Positions 9,652 through 62,003 of a stretch of 64,000 nucleotides of DNA are shown here, one piece after another. The DNA comes from Macrostomum lignano. Lineage: Eukaryota. The position numbers and the translations under genes are program-made. Location: assembly GCA_002269645.1 (NCBI GenBank), contig NIVC01003019.1:1-64000 (forward strand), given 5' to 3'. Numbering within the stretch: the stretch's first letter is position 1; every line of letters starts with the position of its first letter. The notes below the pieces were generated by a model, which did not search any database, had not been told where the DNA came from, and saw only the letters and a list, made by a program, of their open reading frames with translations.

Positions 9652-46878
<37,227 letters not shown>

Positions 46879-47119
46879 CTTCAGGAGGCGGCGGCGGTGG
46901 CACCTCCTGCTGACTCAGTTCGAGAGAATCTCGGCCATTCTCCGTGGATGGGCAGCGGTTAGCCGCTCCGCTCGATTGAAGGAATGACGGCCGGGCTGAA
47001 AAATAGCATCAGTGTTGGTGTTTTTCCACGGCTGTTTCTTAAAAGGTTGAGATTCATAATTTTGGTTGCTATTATAGATCTGTAAGCCAAATCGATACAA
47101 ATAAGAGAGTCGCATGTTT

Positions 47120-50290: not shown

Positions 50291-50565
50291 GAATAAAAAA
50301 TATCGGAGCTTTATTGGAAATGGGCAGCAGTGGCAAGGAGACTCGATCCAAGTGAAGAGTAAATGACTGACAAGCGCCATGCAGTGTAAAGGACAAATGC
50401 AGTCAATACTGCTGTTGTGGAAGTGATGGAAATTCACTTGCTGCATAGGAGAAGGCGGACGGCGTCAGAGTTGGGATAAAGAACTCAATCAGTTGGGTTT
50501 CCGCTAGAGGCAAAGTAATTAACTGGGACAGTGAGATGCTGGATGGCGGATGCAGCGTTTGCTAA

Positions 50566-51637
<1,072 letters not shown>

Positions 51638-52409
51638 AGTGCCTCGCTCGTGCTTAAGAGTCAGCCATTTCGAACTTGGCAGCAGAGGATTAGGAAGAAC
51701 AGTAGGAGGGAATGGCTGCAAGGGGTTTGAAGTTGGTCTCTGTGCCAGTGTAGTATTTCACATGAATATCCATATACTGGTATATATATATGTGTGTACA
51801 TACCCCCTGAGAGCAGATCGCAGCCCGGAGTCCAGTCAGTGCCAGTTGTATGGCAGGGCTGACACCGGAGGGTAGAGAGGTCTTAATTAATTATTTATTG
51901 TAAGCCACGGGCCGCCTCCCCACCATCTCGCATCTTCCCTCTCCCGCCCAGGCTCTACTTCTTCAGCAGCAAGCGGTCAGCAATCCCAGCGGCTGGCAGT
52001 CCGGCATGACCACAGGGTTGCCTTCAACAAAACGTGGAGACCCAATAAAAGTCATATACATCCTTATGCAGCCCGGTCATTGCACTGAAGTAAGCTTAAA
52101 AGTTTCTTAAGAATTAAAGAGCTAACTAAATAAGAGTTTACTGTGTTTAGATACTTAGAGCTACTATATCTATAGACAGTTGATAAGTTAAACAAATTCA
52201 CTGGTGCCAAGAAGTTAGCGAGGAAATTGCATGCACCATTCCAGGGTGTCAGAAAGTGAGAGTGGAGAGCAATTAAGGGGAACTGGGAGTGTTTTAGACT
52301 GAGCATCCGGCCCTATTAGTTATGGCGACTGAGACTGGCAATAAAAAAGTGGTTGAAAGTGTTTCTTAAGCTTAGTAGAGCTTACCCGCATAAACCACTG
52401 TCTGTGGTT

Positions 52410-53100: not shown

Positions 53101-54807
53101 GGTATCTTTTAAATGTCTAATTGAGTCAAACAGGTGCAGAGATCTCACCTTTGTTAACAGCCGGTTAAGAATTTGGACAAAAGCTAATTAGGAGCAATAT
53201 TTTAAATTAGTTGACGAGTCGATAAAAAATCTGACGCATGTTGCGTTAAATTTTTCGGTTGAGCAAAGCTAAACCAGAAGCCGCTGTCTGTGACCCGTTC
53301 TGCAATTTTATAGCCAAATAGGCGGTGGATAACAATTTTTTTGGCAGGAGTGGCGTGGAACAGCAGAAACCCATCTCTATCCGGCTTTGAGAAGGGCAGG
53401 GATGGCGGAGGGAGACGGCTGAGAGGGTGAAGGGTTGACTGAAGGGGGGCGAGGTGGGGGGGGGGGCTCTGACCCCGCACTAGCGGGCTGGGGGGAATCC
53501 GCATCTTCTCAAACACCCCACGAAAGTCGCGAATCAGACTCAGCTCCGCCTACCCCATCCTCTCTTCTCTCCTGGCTCTTCTGTCGTCTGCTTTTCCTTC
53601 CCCCCTCTGCGCCGGCTTTTCCCGGCTTCAACTGGAAACTGGGAGGCGGGCAGGGGGAGACAGCATTGCCAGCATCCAGCTCTTCCATAGGGAGCTGTAC
53701 TCAACCTCCCGGTCGGACATGAAGCTTCATTCTCTTTGCACTCTTGACTCTCCCCATGCTCTGTCCCGGGTTTCTCTTGCCCTATCCTGCACCCCCCCCC
53801 CAGTGCACTCGGGTGGCGAACGAGCTTTCTCGCGCCTGCTCAATTAAGAAACTCAGACAGAATTTCGTTCTGTACGCTTTCACCCCAGCGTCCAGCTATT
53901 TCAGTGGCACACTTTTGCGTGCAAGGAGAATATCGCCGCTTAGGGGGGGGGGATAAATTTAGAAATCCCCTCAGTCCAAACTCTCCCTCTAACCACCAGC
54001 CAGCTCGAAATGAGCGCCTCACGATGGCCCCGAGCGCATCTCCTGATCGCCACCCCGCCCACCAGCAAAGTGTAACTATTACTCCGAGGCCGAGTGCAGA
54101 TGGACAGATACCCCCTCCTGAGACAGCCAGAGTCCTGCACCACCCACTCCGAATTGGCGATCCCAATAAAGCCGGCTAAAATCCCCAACCCGCACCTCGA
54201 GAGCCACCCAGTATTCGAGAGCTATGACTATAAATACTCGGACAGAATTCCTTCTGCATCCCTATTTTTTGCTCGATTGCTGAGACTGGCCCCAGCTGGG
54301 AGATATTAGCCCGGGGGCAAACCGCCACAGAGAGTGCACACATTCCTGCGGCGACAAATGGGCAGAATTGTCGTCAGCTCTGGTTGTGATACGATGTCTT
54401 CCAAAGGTTGCTTGCAGCTGCACAGAGATGCCAGAGCCAAATTTGCTGTACAAAACGGGAGATGATTGCATGGCTTCAGTGCACCTTCCAAACTATCGTT
54501 CCCAGCAGACAGGCAGCTATCAATTATTTTCTCTCACTCCACTTGAGATCTACAACAGACAAATGACAAAAGTGACGATATAAAAAAGCGTTTGCTATTT
54601 TTAAAAATGAAACTGCTTATCAAACAATTTGAAAGGATCAATTTAAAAAAATGCTTCAACTCGCGCGCCAACATGGGATTGTGTTTCTGTACGAGCTACT
54701 TGAAGTAGCCTGACTATAGGTCAACAACTAAAATACGGTCGATGTGAACGTTCGAAGCTACTACATGAACTGTGACGAAAATAATATAATAGTAATAATT
54801 GATTAAA

Positions 54808-55082
54808 CCTGCACTAAATGGGCAGATGTGCAACCGACAGCTCAGCCGCAGCTATTGCGCGGCGCATCTGAAGGCTGCGTACGGCTGTTCAGTCTAAGGA
54901 CTGGGGGGTCGCCACACACACACCCTCAATTACCCCAGCTAATGCTGGCAACCATTTTACAGCTGGGTGAAGCAGAGTTAAGTATTTTGCTCAAGGATAC
55001 AAATTTTTCCGATTGAGTCGAGAATCGAACCCCCGACCTTTCAGTCGTGAGTCCGACGCTCTGACCACTATAGGCTGCAACC
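54808..55082 (-). mobile_element. SINE family B copy
   Basis: Reverse complement matches 6770-7052 over its full length. Confidence 0.78.
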
Positions 55083-56414
55083 CCGTAGTGACCAATGAAT
55101 TTTTTATAGTTTCGACTTGAGAAGCCAGTCTTGACTTTGGAGTTGACTTTGAGACGTAACTTTACCCCCCCTGAAAGACGTATATGGGGAATTCCTTTAA
55201 AATATGACCTTTACCTTGACCGTGAACATAAAGGATAAAATAGTATAGCTTCTTCCTCTTTGTCATGGCTAGATGTGTGCGTATCGATTTAAAGACTATC
55301 TATGTAGACCAAAATAACTTGTCCAGACTATCCAGTGTTGGTGTGCATATGGCCCTATATCTATTCGTACATGCCTTCTCGTTAAAACACTTCCTAATGC
55401 TAAGAGGATTAATTATTCGAAAGATTCTTCACAATACGCTCGTTCGATTGGCGATCAAAGCATTCCGAAAAAAACTTGAGTGGTCATAGGTCAGTTGATC
55501 TCAAATCAACTCCGCCTCTGGCTACGGCTACTGCATCGTGTCCGAAGGAAGAACCGTGGCGACCTTCTCCCAGCACACCGGAACCTGCTCTACCGTTGTC
55601 CAGAACGAACTTCTCGCCATCAGCTGCTGTCACCACTCGGATCAACCAGTGGGTGGCTTCAAAGCACAGGGAGAGGTGGGCTAACGCCCCCGACTGCCGG
55701 CAATCCCGCGCGGCTGCCCCCTGTCTTTGACCCGCCCTCCGCAGGGCCCTGCATGCTTGGACTCAACCTCAGGGACATCAGGGCGGTGACCATGGCTCTC
55801 TCGGGTCGTGGCTGTTTTGCCAGGCATCGCCACTTCCGGGGAAAATCCATAGTGAGAAATGCCCATGCTGCCTCTTCGGTGTTGAGCATGCGGAGCACTT
55901 CATTTGTGAATGCTTCACCTTTACTCAGGACAGGCTCACCTACCTCGGACAAAACCCTGGACGCTTCCAGGCCCGAGAGTTTCGATCTCTGCCAGCTCGT
56001 CCGCTACCTAAGGACGAGCGACCATCCACCTCCTGGACTCTTCAGAGGGGGACCGCGCTGCGGACACCGGCACCACTGGATCTCCCTGCACGACACCGCA
56101 GCACCAGCTGCCCGTGGTCGCCAGGGGTTAGCTAGAGCGACGAGATCTCTACAATCGTAGAGATTACAAGGCTCTGTAATGTCCGGGTAAATCTCAGCAG
56201 AAAAGACGTGCGGGCCATCACCATGACCTTCACGGTGCTACGCCAAGCATTGTTTTTTCCGCCTAGACATTAAAAATAACAAGCATTTTGTCTGCCAATT
56301 TCCAGTCTTTAACAAGGATCGACTGCAATACCTTGGGCCAAAGCCATGCTTGGGAATACGTCCATGAAATAGGTCTTAGTGTCTGTCTGTGCTAATGGCC
56401 TTCCGTTTTAGTAC

Positions 56415-56815
56415 CTGTCAGTGCTAGTGCCTTTCCATCTTAGTATCCGTCTGTGCTAGTGCAATTCCATCTTATTATCCATCTGTGCTAGTGCAATTCC
56501 ATCTTAGTATCCGTCTGTGCTAGTGCAATTCCATCTTAGTATCCGTCTGTGCTAGTGCAATTCCATTTTAGTATCCATCTGTGCTAGTGCTATTCCATCT
56601 TAGTATCCATCTGTGCTAGTGCCCTTCCATCTTAGTATCCGTCTGTGCTAGTGCAATTCCATCTTAGTATCCGTCTGTGCTAGTGCTATTCCATCTTAGT
56701 ATCCGTCTGTGCTAGTGCAATTCCATTTTAGTATCCGTCTGTGCTAGTGCCCTTTCATCTTAGTATCCGTCTGTGCTAGTGCTATTCCATCTTAGTATCC
56801 GTCTAAGTATCTTAG
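56415..56815 (+). repeat. 32-bp minisatellite tccatcttagtatccgtctgtgctagtgcaat
   Basis: Direct reading. Confidence 0.9.
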
Positions 56816-57000
56816 TATCCGAAACAATAACTCTTTAAATAATCTGAATGACTCTTTCACCCGGATGGTAAAAGCTGACTTTACAGCTGCGGTGCCACGA
56901 CAGTATATTTTTTCGTTTGAAATCGAATGGTTCAATCTTTAGCTTATCTTTAAATCAGCTTTAGTTTGTGTTAAAGAATAGCAACTCGACTTGTTGCAAG

Positions 57001-57872
57001 TTAGTAACGATAGGGGCCATTGTACCTGGCCGTCGACCGGAAACGCATGGCGGAGCCGAGGTAGCGCTTGCCCTGCCGCTGGTACCAGTTCGGCCAGGAG
57101 TACCGCCACCGACGTTCGCCTCCAAAACGAACGGCGGCGCCAAGATGTCTTTTAACCAGCTGTTCAGCAGAATCCTCCAAATCGTTGTTAGCGTCTTGGT
57201 CAATGTTGTGCGCAACACCTGTATCGAAGTACCAGTCAGCAAGGTAAGGCAGATTGTAGCTTCGCTTGTAATTAGGCACGCTCCAACGCCAGGGCGTGCC
57301 GACGTGACGCTTGAAACGGAGTCTCATAGCAGAGCCCATGTTCTTCTTGCTTCGGAGTCTCATCGCAGAGCCCATGTTCTTCTTGCTTCGGAGTCTCATA
57401 GCCGAGCCTAAGTACTTCTTGCCTCGAAGTCTCATGGCAGAAGCCATGCTCTTTTTGCCTCGAAATCTCATGGCAGAGCCCATGTTCTTCTTGCCTCGAA
57501 ATCTCATGGCAGAACCCATGTTCTTCTTGCTTCGGAGTCTCGTGGCAGAACCCATGTTCTTCTTGCTTCGGAGTCTCATGGCAGAACCCATGTTCTTCTT
57601 GCTTCGGAGTCTCATAGCAGCGCCCAAGTACCGTTTCACCTGCTCAATTCGATTTATCAGGTCGCTTGAAGCGCTTTGAGAAAATTCCTGCAGCGTTGGC
57701 TCATTGTCAATCGAATTGGCGCTCTGAAATCAATTGATTAGCGATGCAGATTGAGTGAGGGCTAGTTTGAAATGATTAAAAATATAGGTGCAACTCGGTA
57801 AGTAGGACTCACCTCGGCGATCACGGCAAGTGCGCTGCACAGAAGCAACATCAGTAGAGCTGCCCGGGTCAT
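57001..57872 (-). CDS. Neuropeptide precursor (260 aa), exons 57872-57813 and 57723-57001
   Basis: Signal peptide MTRAALLMLLLCSALAVIAE (not in the ORF track); 89-nt GT-AG intron in phase 0; repeated peptides separated by KK/KR; several G-KK/G-KR amidation signals. Confidence 0.9.
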
Positions 57873-58796
57873 TTCTCAGTAAGGTGGAGTTTTGCGAGGC
57901 CTGAAATGTTGGAGATAAAACAGTAGCGACTTCGCTAAAAATTTCTGTCACGTCTGATCAAGCTGTCTGATTTTGAGCTGAATAAATTAGACAAATTTTA
58001 CAGCTTCATAACAAGCTGAGTGAAACGTTTTCTTTCCTAGAAATGATTTGTTTTCAAAATCAGGCATCACGCAAAGCAGTAGAGGTCTTGAGCAGCTTTG
58101 CGAGTCCACAGCAGCATTCCGATGCCAAATTTGAATTTGAGAAGCTCTCGCGGAGACCGCTAGGATTACCCAGAGCGATTGCACAAGACATTTGCTTAAT
58201 CTCAATCCCTGTTAATTCTGCTCGGGTAGCACAAGCTGTCAGCGGATTTGTGCATAATCTAAAATATGCTTCATCACGTAATTACTGCAAGCCTAATGGA
58301 GCCCAACAACCAAATGGCTATAAATCCGCTCTACGAGTATGCTTGAGTCTCGCTTAGCGAGTTCATTGAGTAAGCAGTCTGGCTGAGTTACAGACAGCCA
58401 CCTGCAGCCTGTAGTTGCTACGCTAGACTTACTCAGTAGGCGAATGAAGTTCTGCAGCCTTGATCGAGTCTGTGTTTGAAATCTGTCTTTATTCAATGAG
58501 CAGAAAAAATTCTATGTCGAATTCTAGGGGGAACGGAGGCGAAGTTCAAGTGGAGAGGGAACGCGAAAGATTTTCGTCGCTTTTATTTTTCACTACTCGA
58601 AACTGAGACTACTGAGAAAACTGGATGGGCTGAGACCGTCAGGTACAACCAATGAGAACGCGTCTTGGTGAGAATGAAGCTCAGTACAAGCTCAGAAAAT
58701 GCTGCACCGAAAAATCCTCATTGGTCATTTCAGGGAGTCGAATTTAAAAAAGTTTGAGCTCAGGTTCGAGAATAGAGTTCAGTTTCAGATTCGAGT

Positions 58797-59115
58797 TCGG
58801 GTAGGGCTTAGGTTCGGTATTTGAGTAGGGTTTAGGTTCGGTATTTGAGTAGGGTTTAGGTTCGGTATTTGAGTAGGGTTTAGGTTCGGTATTTGAGTAG
58901 GGTTTAGGTTCGGTATTTGAGTAGGGTTTAGGTTCGGTATTTGAGTAGGGCTTAGGTTCGGTATTTGAGTAGGGTTTAGGTTCGGTATTTGAGTAGGGTT
59001 TAGGTTCGGATTTCGGGTAGGGTTTAGGTTCGGGATTCGGGTAGGGTTTAGGTTCGGGTTTCGGGTAGGGTTAAGGTTCGGGATTTGGGTAGGGTTTAGG
59101 TTCTGGATTGGAGTA
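58797..59115 (+). repeat. 24-bp minisatellite gtagggtttaggttcggtatttga (telomere-like hexamer substructure)
   Basis: Direct reading. Confidence 0.88.
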
Positions 59116-59509
59116 GAGTTTCGGATTCGAGTTTAGACTCAAGCTTCGAGCTTCTAGTTCAGGTTTAACGATTTTCAATTCGAAGTTTAGAGAGCCGCTA
59201 TGAAAATTTCGGAAGAAAAGTGCATTCAGAAATTTTTTCTGGTCCGATTTGTTCTATTTCTTGGAATGAGATACTCCCCTCATCCCATTCTCAACATGGA
59301 GAGGCGCGATAATAATCAGTTTGCTGTGAGTCCGTGAACGAGTAGGTTAATCCCAAGAGAAAGGCAGTCGTCTTCTGCGGGGGGAGAGGGCAATCTGTTC
59401 TTGGGGAAGGCAATGCTTCGAGCGTCCTTGGCTATTTTATCTCAGACTCTGCTAGAGCGAAAGAGATCTTCAGGGCGCTCTCTGAAAGAAGCAACGATAT
59501 TGCGGACAT

Positions 59510-60060
59510 GTAGTCTGACCAACATTGTGTCGACTCGCTAATATTTGTGTCAGTAGTCTGACCGACATTGTGCCAGACTGGCTAATATTTGTGTCAGTAG
59601 TTTGACCAAAATTGTGTCAGACTGGCTAATATTTGTGTCAGTAGTTTGACCGACATTGTGTGAGCTTCGCTAATATTTGTGTCATTAGTTTGACCAAAAT
59701 TGTGTCAGACTGGCTAATATTTGTGCCAGTAGTTTGACCAAAATTGTGTCAGACTGGCTAATATTTGTGTCAGTAGTTTGACCAAAATTGTGTCAGACTG
59801 GCTAATATTTGTGTCAGTAGTTTGACCGACATTGTGTGAGCTTCGCTAATATTTGTGTCAGTAGTTTGACCAAAATTGTGTCAGACTGGCTAATATTTGT
59901 GTCAGTAGTTTGACCAAAATTGTGTCAGACTGGCTAATATTTGTGTCAGTAGTTTGACCGACATTGTGTCAGACTGGCTAATATTTGTGTCAGTAGTTTG
60001 ACCGACATTGTGTCAGATTGGCTAATATTTGTGTCAGTTAACTAGCTGATATTGTGTCAG
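59510..60060 (+). repeat. 44-bp minisatellite ttgtgtcagactggctaatatttgtgtcagtagtttgaccaaaa
   Basis: Direct reading; internal ttgtgtcag duplication. Confidence 0.9.
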
Positions 60061-60442
60061 GTTACTAGTCTTGGAAAAGCGCAAAACCAAAGGAACAATA
60101 TAAAATTTTCCAAATCAAAAATATAAAAACATTTTTTTCAAATTTAGAGGCTGGTTATTCATTGTCACGTATTCTCTGTCTTTTTATTAAAATGAGGGCG
60201 AAAGAGTTAAAATTAGGATATGCATTTATTGGCTCAACCGCAATGCTTCTCGTTGCATCAATTGGCGAATGTGTTAAGGTCGTTGTTAAACTGTTTGTTT
60301 AACGTTTAACTAGGGAGTAGGTCCATTTTGTAAACATTGTGCATTCAAAGCGGAACCAGAATGGATTGCTAATCTATTTCTATCAATCTAGAATCATAAT
60401 GGATTGCTAATCTATTTTACTATTGTATAAACTAATAGGGGG

Positions 60443-60742
60443 GGGGGCGTAGCCCAGCGGTGGCGCAGCTGCTCTGGTGTGCCAGCGACCCAGGCTCGAT
60501 TCCAAGTGCAGTCACGGGGCTGAATTGGAATCTCGGCTTGGCTCTGCTCGTGCAATTAACGGCCTTGAGGGCCAACCCCCCAAGGCGCAGTGAAGTGTAC
60601 ATGCCTAACGATAATATAAAGTTAGGGCCGCTGTACACTCCTGTGTGAGTGTGTGCCTGCGTACGTATCCGAGCGCTTGTATGCCTGCTCAGGGGAGTCG
60701 GCGGAATGGGCAGTAATGCCTCTCGCCGGTTGTGTGCCAATG
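60443..60742 (+). mobile_element. SINE family A, 5-prime part (interrupted)
   Basis: Same head and body as 24965-24660 in the opposite orientation. Confidence 0.8.
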
Positions 60743-62003
60743 GTATATTCTTCTGCAGTCGGGATGCATGATATCGGTATAACACGCGAGCGCCGGTAGG
60801 CGCGAGTCGTGTTATTCCAATATCATGCATCCCGACTGCAGAAAAGTGCATTGACTAGTGTTTCCAAATAGGCTAGTTGTTTATGATCGAGAAAGACAAC
60901 GCAGTCTCAGTAGAATCTGTCTAGTTCAATTTTGTTATGTCATTTATCTCTCTCCCTCGCTGCCTTCTGATTGGCTCTCAGTTCTCGCCTCTTTCCTCGG
61001 TTGCGGACTCCACCCCACCCCCTGTCTTATCTTACACCCCCTCCAGTATATTTGAATAAATATACCCGTTTAGGCCCTGCGCTTCGCTATCGTTTTTTTC
61101 CGAAGCCTCTCCAAGGCCAATCTTTAAAACCGTACCGTTTCTCCGAGAAGACCGCTCGAGGATATCGATTCCTTCAAGAGTTTATGAAGAAACTTAGTGC
61201 GAGGGCCGGTCTAAGCAAGGTCTACACTAATCACTGTATTAGGTAAGTAAATTTCTTTTCCGATATGGTATATAAATAGTATATAAATAGTATATTTATA
61301 AATAATAGTTTTAACTAGTTCATGTAAAATTACTTTCCTTTGATTCTCCCACAGAGTCACTAGAGTGTGCGATCTAGACGCCGCTGGCCATTCGCTGCAA
61401 GACATAATGCTTATTACCGGTCAGAAATGTGAGAAGACGGTCAAAAGGTATTTAACCAGGTGCCGGGACCGCAGTCTGTTCAGGAGTTCCAAGGCAGTGA
61501 ACTGTGCACTAAGCCGGCATATTCCAAGCACAAGCACAATGCCGTCCAATGAGGCGTCTTTCTCTGCTAATGCGAGCGGCTCTATCAGTTCTACTGTCTG
61601 CACGCAAGTGATGACGGATCACCAGTTGCAATGCCACCCCACAATCAATTGACGAGCCGGTTCCTCGGCCAGTTCATATCGAGGCCTGTACGTCCGACCA
61701 AGAATATGCGTGTTTGCATTGACGGCAACAACAATTTTATTAACACTGTGTTTGAGTAGGGCGTATCTATCAAAAATACTAATTCTTCGAGAGAAACTAT
61801 GGCTTTAGACTTTTCCCCCTCATTTTCATGCTATAAGTAGTTGTTGTTTATAATTTACAATTATAAACCGGATAAATAAAAAATTAATCATCTAATAATT
61901 AATTTTTGTGTCATCTAAAAACTCGTTAAACTAATGTTTTTTTCTATGGACAATAGCACGCATCCCGCGTGCGTGTTAATGGGTAGCGAAATGCTTGTCA
62001 ATG
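60738..62003 (+). mobile_element. Crypton-like insertion (1,261 bp) carrying a tyrosine recombinase C-terminal fragment
   Basis: Splits a SINE and has CAATG at both junctions. Coding part ~61020-61242 (PPVYLNKY...FFPKP...FMKKLSARAGLSKVYTNHCIR), intron 61243-61354, then VTRVCDLDAAGHSLQDIMLITGQKCEKTVKRY to 61652. Confidence 0.75.

What the first reader, a model, noticed from the sequence alone, without database searches (positions are those of the whole stretch)
57001..57872. Neuropeptide precursor with an unfamiliar xxGxAMR(L/F)Rx peptide family, mixing amidated and non-amidated copies
Seen: signal peptide, then nine tandem 12-aa units (36-bp repeat): YLGAAMRLRS, NMGSAMRLRS x2, NMGSATRLRS, NMGSAMRFRG x2, SMASAMRLRG, YLGSAMRLRS, NMGSAMRLRF. 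Two more related copies follow (HLGAAVRFGGE, YLGSAMRFRSTAR). Known: G-KK gives amidation, so three would end in -MR(F/L)R-amide and the rest in free -RS/-RF. The core recalls myomodulin (-MLRL-amide) and FMRFamide, but the extra Arg fits neither, and I cannot assign a named family. A single S/G codon change appears to toggle amidation.
Basis: partly seen in the sequence, partly recalled or inferred. Interest (0 to 1): 0.7.

Follow-up and report, generated by a model that had tools for sequence, protein, structure and literature searches.

The report
Flatworm HIGA-type neuropeptide precursor gene
This is a real two-exon gene of the flatworm Macrostomum lignano that encodes a secreted multi-copy peptide precursor; its peptides belong to the "HIGA" neuropeptide family already described in annelid and ribbon worms, so it is a new member of a known family and not a new family.

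Summary
On the minus strand of 57001-57872 lies a two-exon gene. Exon 1 is 57872-57813, followed by an 89-nt GT..AG intron, and exon 2 is 57723-57001. It encodes a 260-aa protein with a signal peptide, nine tandem 12-aa units (a 36-bp repeat) and more related units at the C-terminus.

The window is GenBank NIVC01003019.1 of Macrostomum lignano. The gene is BOX15_Mlig031380g1, annotated only as "hypothetical protein".

The units [N/Y][M/L]G[S/A]AMR[L/F]Rx, each placed directly after a dibasic site, match the HIGA proneuropeptides. Platynereis dumerilii has HIGAAMRLRPSKFED and HLGAAMRLVQPK; nemerteans have HLGSAMRL-GKK and FLGSAMRYRQ.

An HMM built only from annelid and nemertean HIGA units scores the flatworm protein at 71 bits (E about 1e-15 for 1.8 billion sequences). 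Twelve unrelated multi-copy neuropeptide precursors score at most 4 bits.

In this family the N-terminus is conserved and the C-terminal tail varies. Amidated and free-acid copies on one precursor are usual. The S/G/A/F position is therefore the variable tail (P3 of the KK site), and there is no evidence that it is a regulated switch.

HIGA has not been reported from flatworms in the literature I could search. A side lead is that nemertean HIGA units link the family to arthropod NPLP1.

The parts
57813..57872 (-). Exon 1: start codon and signal peptide MTRAALLMLLLCSALAVIA|E. It has a positive n-region, a 16-residue hydrophobic core, and V-I-A at positions -3 to -1.
   Evidence: The peptide is identical in the paralogues, with only synonymous changes. 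No SignalP run was possible; the assignment is by inspection.
57724..57812 (-). Phase-0 intron of 89 nt, GTGAGT...TTTCAG.
   Evidence: The length is the same, and the sequence differs at 0 and 2 bases, in paralogous loci L001 and L002. The public gene span of 872 nt equals 783 nt of CDS plus this intron.
57001..57723 (-). Exon 2: the rest of the prohormone, including the stop codon (57003-57001).
57631..57723 (-). Acidic N-terminal propeptide (E)SANSIDNEPTLQEFSQSASSDLINRIEQV, followed by the first KR site.
   Evidence: net charge about -5.
57307..57630 (-). Array of nine 36-bp / 12-aa units, each a decapeptide [N/Y/S][M/L][G/A][S/A]A[M/T]R[L/F]R[S/G/F] plus KK (KR after the last). Unit k starts at 57630-36k. 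Units 4-6 (57522-57415) carry Gly, giving a predicted C-terminal amide.
   Evidence: The HIGA-unit HMM reports 9 domains in this protein.
57523..57558 (-). Third unit, NMGSATRLRS-KK (ACG for ATG). It is encoded in the genome but absent from the public 248-aa model of this locus.
57262..57306 (-). Degenerate HIGA-like unit HVGTPWRWSVPNY plus KR. It keeps the family's N-terminal His.
57148..57261 (-). Acidic spacer SYNLPYLADWYFDTGVAHNIDQDANNDLEDSAEQLV plus KR. Four of the seven amino-acid differences from paralogue L002, and its 2-residue insertion, fall here.
   Evidence: net charge about -8.
57109..57147 (-). Canonical HIGA-type unit HLGAAVRFGGE plus RR.
57064..57108 (-). WRYSWPNWYQRQ-G-KR, predicted to give WRYSWPNWYQRQ-amide. 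It is a Trp-rich peptide unrelated to the repeat.
57004..57063 (-). C-terminal HIGA-type unit with a long tail, YLGSAMRFRSTARYNGPYRY.

Best explanation
The locus is the Macrostomum lignano gene BOX15_Mlig031380g1. It encodes a 260-aa secreted prohormone of the HIGA proneuropeptide family.

Inferred mechanism:
1. The signal peptide is removed after Ala19.
2. A PC2-type prohormone convertase cuts at every KK/KR/RR.
3. A carboxypeptidase trims the basic residues.
4. Where a Gly is exposed, it is converted to a C-terminal amide.

Predicted products are six free-acid decapeptides (YLGAAMRLRS, NMGSAMRLRS x2, NMGSATRLRS, YLGSAMRLRS, NMGSAMRLRF) and three amidated nonapeptides (NMGSAMRFR-NH2 x2, SMASAMRLR-NH2). 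Further products are HVGTPWRWSVPNY, HLGAAVRFGGE, WRYSWPNWYQRQ-NH2, YLGSAMRFRSTARYNGPYRY and two acidic spacers.

The part under selection, and shared with annelid and nemertean HIGA peptides, is the N-terminal core x-[L/M/I]-G-[S/A]-A-M-[R/K/N]-[L/F], directly after the cleavage site. That core, not the C-terminus, is most likely what a receptor reads.

The 'extra' Arg9 and Arg7 sit at P4 and P6 of the KK site, positions where basic residues favour convertase cleavage. Residue 10 is P3, which is free to vary.

Shown here: the gene structure, the repeat, purifying selection and the family match. Inferred: processing, neuronal expression and signalling. The receptor is unknown.
For: Gene model and repeat.

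Species and locus identity: window 54001-60872 is 100% identical to NIVC01003019.1. The homologues are M. lignano 'hypothetical proteins'.

Selection:
- pN/pS is about 0.2 outside the repeats.
- Inside the repeats, positions 3-9 (GSAMR[L/F]R) are nearly invariant in 25 units yet use 2-3 synonymous codons each. Position 10 takes S/G/A/F.

Family sequences:
- The Platynereis HIGA precursor has KRHIGAAMRLRPSKFEDKR and many KRHLGAAMRLVQPK... units. Four of its peptides were detected by mass spectrometry as full KR-to-KR, non-amidated species.
- Nemertean HIGA precursors have KRHLGSAMRLGKK, KRFLGSAMRYRQRQ, KRHLGSAMKFGKR and KKNLGSAMRWKGGKR.

Statistics:
- An HMM of 79 HIGA units from annelid and nemerteans only scores the window protein 71.5 bits, E=1.1e-15 at Z=1.84e9. 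200 residue shuffles score at most 5.2 bits, and the periodic false positives of the phmmer search score below 8 bits.
- Twelve unrelated multi-copy L. longissimus proneuropeptides score at most 4.2 bits against the sub-model of 74 of these units (the five LAR/IAR units left out), which scores the window protein 71.1 bits.
- An exhaustive phmmer of 1.84 billion representatives independently pulled out two HIGA-like precursors, P0042 and P0054, among repeat noise.

Mixed amidated and free-acid copies occur on single nemertean HIGA precursors, and HIGA is listed among amidated pNPs.

M. lignano has a nervous-system-expressed PC2 homologue.

The public annotation is RNA-seq-guided.
Against: - There are no expression, peptidomic or receptor data for this gene, so neuronal origin is inferred from architecture and family only.
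- The match rests on a short motif (about 8 residues) repeated many times. HMM E-values for short repeated motifs are approximate, and convergence of short peptides cannot be formally excluded.
- Most M. lignano units begin with Asn or Tyr, whereas 73 of 79 reference units begin with His.
- The units abut without the acidic spacers seen in the annelid and nemertean arrays.
- Beyond the motif, alignment of the non-repeat parts is weak (z 0.9-4.8).
- HIGA peptides were not among the precursors detected by MS in Lineus longissimus.
- The word-indexed database searches found no other flatworm member.
Confidence: 0.78

Rival explanations
1. A flatworm- or Macrostomum-specific neuropeptide family whose likeness to HIGA is convergent. 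Short multi-copy peptides evolve fast, and a G-S-A-M-R core after a dibasic site could arise independently.
For: In 5.8 billion proteins the only close homologues are M. lignano copies. The N-terminal residue is N/Y, not H, in 10 of 12 units. There are no spacers between units. Similarity outside the motif is weak. No HIGA-like strings were found in the held planarian, polyclad or schistosome supplements.
Against: Eleven units match over 7-8 positions, including the position of the motif relative to the cleavage site. Two C-terminal units keep His-Leu-Gly-Ala-Ala or Tyr-Leu-Gly-Ser-Ala-Met exactly as in the reference species. N, Y and F at position 1 also occur in accepted nemertean HIGA units (6 of 79). 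HMM scores are 71 bits against at most 5 for shuffles and controls.
Confidence: 0.1
2. A derived myomodulin or FMRFamide-like (RFamide) precursor, in which an extra Arg has been added at the C-terminus.
For: Superficial -MRL- and -MRF- cores. Three units end in Gly-KK.
Against: Myomodulins end in RLamide/RMamide or PRXamide, and FLPs in RFamide. Both need Gly directly after that residue in most copies. Here none of the 12 units has RL-G, RM-G or RF-G followed by a dibasic site. Gly is present in only 3 of 9 units, always after a further Arg, and is replaced by S, A or F in paralogues. The conserved part is N-terminal, which is the opposite of those families. The nemertean FMRFamide precursor scores 4.2 bits with the HIGA model.
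Confidence: 0.03
3. A secreted cationic peptide or protein with a non-neuronal role, such as a gland secretion, an antimicrobial peptide or a reproductive secretion. Under this reading the KK pairs are simply part of a basic repeat and not cleavage sites.
For: No tissue data are available. The predicted peptides carry a net charge of +2 to +3. M. lignano has many lineage-specific secreted repeat proteins (my own knowledge, not tested here).
Against: The alternation of acidic spacers with dibasic-flanked short peptides, the Gly-dibasic sites, and the homology to precursors whose processed peptides were detected by MS in Platynereis all point to prohormone processing. Ten-residue peptides are short for antimicrobial action.
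Confidence: 0.07

Closest known systems
HIGA proneuropeptide (Platynereis dumerilii, GenBank KF515947, Conzelmann et al. 2013; nemertean HIGA, Thiel et al. 2021)
   Same: - A signal peptide and many copies of a peptide that starts directly after KR/KK with x-[L/I/M]-G-[S/A]-A-M-[R/N/K]-[L/F].
- Near-identical strings: Pdu HIGAAMRLRPSKFED and Lineus HLGSAMRL-GKK against window YLGAAMRLRS and NMGSAMRLRG.
- A variable C-terminal tail.
- Amidated and non-amidated copies on one precursor.
- Acidic spacers in part of the protein.
   Different: - The precursor is much smaller: 260 aa, against a Platynereis transcript listed at 1141 and hundreds of residues in nemerteans.
- The nine array units abut directly (a 12-aa period) with no acidic spacer.
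- Position 1 is Asn/Tyr/Ser instead of His in the array.
- Arg9 is invariant.
- There is an extra Trp-rich amidated peptide (WRYSWPNWYQRQ-NH2).
- It has not been reported from Platyhelminthes in the literature I could search.
Arthropod neuropeptide-like precursor 1 (NPLP1)
   Same: - A multi-copy precursor whose peptides share an N-terminal core directly after KR (x-[I/V/L]-[G/A]-[S/T/A]-L-A-R) and variable tails.
- Nemertean HIGA precursors open with HLGSLARHNWLPKP..., close to insect HIGALARLGWLPTLR.
- An insect-only NPLP1 unit HMM scores four of the six nemertean HIGA sequences tested at 33-67 bits (Tubulanus 14.8, Baseodiscus fragment 5.4), against at most 3.1 bits for 12 controls.
- The window's C-terminal YLGSAMRFRSTARYNGP aligns with Tribolium FLGSVARSGWFRPNSRYRSP (z=4.9).
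   Different: The M. lignano protein itself scores only 11 bits with the NPLP1 model. Its core is A-M-R, not L-A-R. Platynereis HIGA does not score at all. Homology of HIGA and NPLP1 is a lead, not established.
Myomodulin (spiralian orthologue of myosuppressin)
   Same: A multi-copy spiralian precursor with a -M-R-L- string.
   Different: Myomodulins are defined by the amidated C-terminus RLamide/RMamide. Here that residue is followed by Arg-x and mostly has no Gly, and conservation is N-terminal.
FMRFamide-like peptides
   Same: An -M-R-F- string in some units, and a multi-copy precursor.
   Different: No RF-Gly-dibasic site anywhere. The nemertean FMRFamide precursor is unrelated by the unit HMM (4.2 bits).

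Membership tests
HIGA proneuropeptide | Secreted precursor with an N-terminal signal peptide | tested here: met
   MTRAALLMLLLCSALAVIA|E has a basic n-region, a hydrophobic core and a small -1/-3 motif. This is by inspection only; no predictor was available.
HIGA proneuropeptide | Several copies of a peptide beginning directly after a dibasic site with the core [H]-[L/I/M]-G-[S/A]-[A/L]-[M/L] | tested here: met
   An HMM from 79 annelid and nemertean units gives 71.5 bits, 9 domains, E=1.1e-15 (Z=1.84e9). Shuffles score at most 5.2 bits. With the 74-unit sub-model (LAR/IAR units left out: window protein 71.1 bits), unrelated pNPs score at most 4.2 bits.
HIGA proneuropeptide | His as the first residue of the peptide (the 'H' of the name) | tested here: inconclusive
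   Only HLGAAVRFGGE and HVGTPWRWSVPNY start with His. The other 10 units start with N, Y or S. In the reference set 73 of 79 units have H, but N, Y and F also occur.
HIGA proneuropeptide | Variable C-terminal extension, with some copies amidated and most not | tested here: met
   Position 10 is S/G/A/F. Three of nine units have Gly-KK. The last unit has a 13-residue tail. The same mixture occurs in Lineus precursors. Platynereis MS peptides are non-amidated.
HIGA proneuropeptide | Acidic spacers between the copies | tested here: not met
   The nine array units are separated only by KK. Acidic stretches exist only before the array and in the C-terminal third. This is a feature of the known members, not a stated definition.
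HIGA proneuropeptide | Expression in neurons, with processed peptides detectable | not testable with these tools
   There is only indirect transcript support: the public RNA-seq-guided gene model has the same two-exon span.
Myomodulin | Peptides end in -RLamide, -RMamide or -PRXamide, i.e. that residue is followed by Gly plus a dibasic site | tested here: not met
   None of the 12 units fits. R-L or R-F is always followed by Arg, then S/G/A/F.
FMRFamide-like peptides | C-terminal RF-Gly followed by a basic cleavage site | tested here: not met
   There is no such site. HLGAAVRFGGE-RR would end in Glu.
NPLP1 (arthropods) | Repeated KR-x-[I/V/L]-[G/A]-[S/T/A]-[L/V]-A-[R/K] units | tested here: inconclusive
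   An NPLP1 unit HMM (27 units, 4 insects) scores the window protein 11.1 bits, controls at most 3.1, and four of the six nemertean HIGA sequences 33-67 bits (Tubulanus 14.8, Baseodiscus 5.4). The reverse HIGA model scores the NPLP1 proteins 1.4-15.1 bits.

The most novel reading that the evidence does not exclude
HIGA (annelids, nemerteans and now a flatworm) and arthropod NPLP1 are one protostome-wide family of N-terminally defined peptides. The compact M. lignano precursor, in a transgenic and RNAi-tractable animal, would then be a good place to find the still unknown receptor. That receptor could be a membrane guanylate cyclase, as reported for the NPLP1-VQQ peptide, rather than a GPCR. 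No paper in the held library mentions both HIGA and NPLP1.
Probability: 0.3. Interest if true: 0.55.

Novelty: new member of a known kind. Interest (0 to 1): 0.35.

Why it matters
It gives a name and a family to three "hypothetical protein" genes of a model flatworm. It extends HIGA peptides, first thought Platynereis-specific and later found in nemerteans, to Platyhelminthes. This argues that the family was present in an early spiralian.

It also corrects how these peptides should be read. The message is N-terminal and the C-terminal residue (including the amidation donor) is loose. This matters for designing synthetic peptides, antibodies and receptor screens.

The possible bridge to arthropod NPLP1 would turn two orphan, lineage-restricted families into one ancient one.

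Tried and rejected
- **Pfam scan of the precursor:** only sub-threshold noise.
- **Rfam over the whole window:** nothing.
- **Word-indexed homology search with the precursor:** only M. lignano copies.
- **Same search with P0042:** only two further unnamed metagenome or SRA proteins.
- **Same search with a 4-unit concatenated HIGA profile:** nothing useful.
- **Exhaustive phmmer:** 57 hits, of which all but P0001, P0042 and P0054 are unrelated periodic repeats, as the HIGA HMM confirmed.
- **Full-text searches for the peptide strings and for the locus tags:** nothing relevant.
- **Papers not held:** McVeigh et al. 2009 and Koziol et al. 2016, the main flatworm npp catalogues, are not in the library. 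I therefore cannot exclude that an M. lignano EST of this gene already carries an 'npp' number.
- **Other flatworm sources:** the held supplements or text of the planarian prohormone paper, the polyclad larval atlas and a schistosome neuropeptide-GPCR paper contain no HIGA-like strings. A 2026 review of flatworm neuropeptides does not list HIGA.
- **A conserved non-repeat module shared with nemertean or annelid precursors:** local alignments are driven mostly by the KR-HLG motif (z 0.9-4.8), so I do not claim it.
- **The window beyond this gene:** it holds only this one copy.
- **Structure prediction:** not attempted, because it is uninformative for a processed peptide precursor.

Full report
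**1. What is there**

The finding lies on the minus strand. Reading 57872 downwards there is an ATG and 20 codons (MTRAALLMLLLCSALAVIAE), then a GTGAGT donor at 57812. An 89-nt intron ends in TTTCAG at 57724. An open frame then runs from 57723 to the stop at 57003-57001. The spliced CDS is 783 nt and encodes 260 aa. Unspliced, exon 1 runs into a TAG within the intron.

Tandem Repeats Finder reports a 36-bp period, 8.6 copies, 88% matches and score 445 at 57317-57626. In protein terms there are nine 12-residue units, each a decapeptide plus KK (the last plus KR), at 57630-57307.

After the array come five further elements:
- HVGTPWRWSVPNY-KR
- a 36-residue acidic spacer followed by KR
- HLGAAVRFGGE-RR
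- WRYSWPNWYQRQ-G-KR
- YLGSAMRFRSTARYNGPYRY-stop

**2. Whose gene it is**

The only close homologues among 5.8 billion proteins are Macrostomum lignano "hypothetical proteins". Window 54001-60872 is base-for-base identical to GenBank NIVC01003019.1 at the same coordinates. The window is therefore the start of that Mlig_3_7 scaffold, and the gene is BOX15_Mlig031380g1 (PAA53821.1, UniProt A0A267DWZ1).

Two further copies exist on other scaffolds. Mlig010852 has 9 units. Mlig018182 has 7 units in the genome and 6 in the public model. This fits the known redundancy of this assembly. Older gene models fuse the gene with its downstream neighbour.

The public model for this locus has 8 units. It omits NMGSATRLRS-KK (57558-57523), which the genome encodes. 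The number of transcribed units is therefore uncertain by one.

The annotation was derived from RNA-seq-guided transcript assembly. A transcript with this two-exon span therefore has indirect support.

**3. Is it a real, constrained coding gene?**

Yes. Outside the repeats the window copy differs from L001 by 4 synonymous and 0 non-synonymous changes. It differs from L002 by 10 synonymous and 7 non-synonymous changes (pS about 0.10, pN about 0.02). Four of those seven replacements, and the only indel, fall in the acidic spacer.

Across the 25 repeat units of the three copies:
- Positions 3-9 (G-S-A-M-R-[L/F]-R) are almost invariant at the protein level, yet use two or three synonymous codons each.
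- Position 1-2 comes in two flavours (N-M or S-M, and Y-L).
- Position 10 is S (9), G (9), A (4) or F (3).
- Phe8 is always accompanied by Gly10 (6 of 6). This is what duplication or conversion of whole units would give.

**4. What family**

Pfam has nothing. An exhaustive phmmer of 1.84 billion representatives returned mostly unrelated periodic proteins. It also returned two precursors, P0042 and P0054, made of KR-H[L/M/I]G[A/S]A[L/M]... units. At the P0042 locus the motif continues through a further 732-aa frame with dozens of copies.

That motif led to the literature. Thiel et al. 2021 list a proneuropeptide group "HIGA" in nemerteans. The name comes from Platynereis dumerilii (Conzelmann et al. 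2013), where the precursor was then thought species-specific. Examples are:
- Platynereis: KRHIGAAMRLRPSKFEDKR and many KRHLGAAMRLVQPK...
- Lineus: KRHLGSAMRLGKK, KRFLGSAMRYRQRQ, KRHLGSAMKFGKR
- Baseodiscus: KKNLGSAMRWKGGKR

These match the window's KR-YLGAAMRLRS-KK, KK-NMGSAMRLRG-KK, KR-HLGAAVRFGGE-RR and KR-YLGSAMRFRS...

I tested this without circularity. The HMM was built from 79 distinct units (dibasic pair plus ten residues) taken only from Platynereis and six nemertean sequences.

| Target | Score |
|---|---|
| Window protein | 71.5 bits, nine domains, E=1.1e-15 for a 1.84-billion-sequence library |
| 200 residue shuffles | at most 5.2 bits |
| Shuffles of the array only | about 23 bits, contributed by the untouched C-terminal units |
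| Spurious phmmer hits | below 8 bits |
| 12 unrelated multi-copy L. longissimus proneuropeptides (allatostatin A, FMRFamide, pedal peptides, PSLamide and others), scored with the 74-unit sub-model below | at most 4.2 bits |

The twelve controls were scored with a sub-model of 74 of the 79 units, with the five LAR/IAR units left out; that sub-model scores the window protein 71.1 bits. I therefore file the gene as a HIGA-type proneuropeptide.

**5. How it most likely works**

By the standard rules of prohormone processing (established knowledge, not tested here), four steps follow:
1. The signal peptide is removed.
2. A PC2-type convertase cuts at KK/KR/RR.
3. A carboxypeptidase trims the basic residues.
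4. An exposed Gly becomes an amide.

A nervous-system PC2 homologue with a severe RNAi phenotype is known in M. lignano.

In Platynereis the HIGA peptides seen by mass spectrometry run from the His after KR to the residue before the next KR and are not amidated. In nemerteans a single precursor mixes Gly-terminated and free-acid copies.

Across all species the conserved part is the N-terminal seven or eight residues, and the tail is free. The "message" is therefore probably N-terminal.

Within the M. lignano unit, Arg7 and Arg9 are P6 and P4 of the KK site. Basic residues at these positions favour convertases (established knowledge). Residue 10 is P3. This accounts for the "extra Arg" and for the freedom of position 10.

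The S/G difference is indeed one base (AGC/GGC) and would change amidation. However, A and F also occupy the position, and F8-G10 linkage shows unit turnover. The mixture is also a family trait. I therefore read it as relaxed constraint, not a switch.

**6. How it differs from known HIGA members**

- The precursor is small.
- The nine units abut with no acidic spacer.
- Position 1 is N/Y/S rather than H, although these residues occur in accepted nemertean units.
- Arg9 is invariant.
- A Trp-rich amidated peptide (WRYSWPNWYQRQ-NH2) is present.
- Beyond the motif, similarity of the non-repeat parts is weak.

**7. Rivals**

Convergence with HIGA, a myomodulin or FLP derivative, and a non-neuronal cationic secretion are considered in the Rival explanations section. 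The myomodulin/FLP reading fails its defining C-terminal test. The other two cannot be excluded without expression and peptidomic data.

**8. Novelty**

I found no report of HIGA in flatworms:
- The only held papers that use the name for a neuropeptide are the two cited.
- A 2026 review of flatworm neuropeptides does not list it.
- The held planarian, polyclad and schistosome sources lack the motif.

The two main flatworm npp catalogues are not held. A prior 'npp' name for an M. lignano EST therefore cannot be ruled out.

My verdict is a new member of a known kind, of moderate interest.

**9. A lead beyond the finding**

Nemertean HIGA precursors begin with HLGSLARHNWLPKP... and contain RRYLGSLLRSG... 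These resemble insect NPLP1 units such as HIGALARLGWLPTLR and YLGSLARSG.

An HMM of 27 NPLP1 units from four insects gave the following scores:

| Target | Score |
|---|---|
| Four of the six nemertean HIGA sequences tested | 33-67 bits |
| Tubulanus | 14.8 bits |
| Baseodiscus (internal fragment) | 5.4 bits |
| M. lignano protein | 11.1 bits |
| 12 controls | at most 3.1 bits |
| Platynereis HIGA | does not score |

The reverse HIGA model, built without the LAR units, gives 1.4-15 bits on NPLP1 proteins, against shuffles of at most 3. No held paper mentions both names.

HIGA and NPLP1 may thus be one protostome family. An NPLP1-VQQ receptor is grouped with membrane guanylate cyclases. This suggests a non-GPCR receptor class to test. 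The lead is suggestive only.

Noticed in passing
window 57523-57558 (-): The public protein model for this locus (PAA53821.1, 248 aa) lacks one 12-aa unit (NMGSATRLRS-KK) that the genome encodes. The model for paralogue Mlig018182 likewise has one unit fewer than its genome (226 aa against 238 aa). Either repeat number is polymorphic, or short-read transcripts collapsed the repeat.
   Followed up: partly
window 46270-46997 (-) and 15902-17104 (-): About 10 kb downstream on the same strand lies an exon matching the 'RabBD domain-containing' part of older fused gene models (98% identity). An ORF with a C2 domain lies further on. Together they suggest a rabphilin- or synaptotagmin-like gene next to the prohormone gene. 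The older models (A0A1I8IP29, A0A1I8IQE1) wrongly fuse the two genes.
   Followed up: partly
window 56374-56804, 58801-59129, 59510-60000+: Satellite arrays flank the gene: a 32-bp unit x13.5 just 3' of it, and a 24-bp unit x13.7 and a 44-bp unit x11+ on the 5' side. At least the 44-bp and 24-bp arrays recur, with shifted registers, in the flanks of paralogous loci L001 and L002.
   Followed up: no
L003 10001-13698 (ENA ERZ25767047 ctg38672, a 1.39-Mb eukaryotic contig): An unidentified animal carries a very large HIGA-like precursor. It has more than 1,200 residues over two adjoining frames, with dozens of alternating KR-HLGSAMKFGHWNNEND and KR-HMGAALAAG-KR units. P0059, P0060 and P0054 are further unnamed HIGA-like precursors from ENA or Logan assemblies.
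   Followed up: partly
literature and supplement sequences: Nemertean HIGA units (HLGSLARHNWLPKP, YLGSLLRSG) resemble insect NPLP1 units (HIGALARLGWLPTLR, YLGSLARSG). An insect-only NPLP1 HMM scores four of the six nemertean HIGA sequences tested at 33-67 bits (Tubulanus 14.8, Baseodiscus fragment 5.4), against at most 3 for controls. No held paper links the two names.
   Followed up: partly
window 29435-32677 (-), 40010-41740 (-), 50550-51875 (+), 21017-22396 (-): Several long ORFs (441-1080 aa) have no Pfam match. Some sit in regions of high GC and strong strand skew (for example 40-44 kb, GC skew 0.38) and may be repeat-derived frames and not genes.
   Followed up: no
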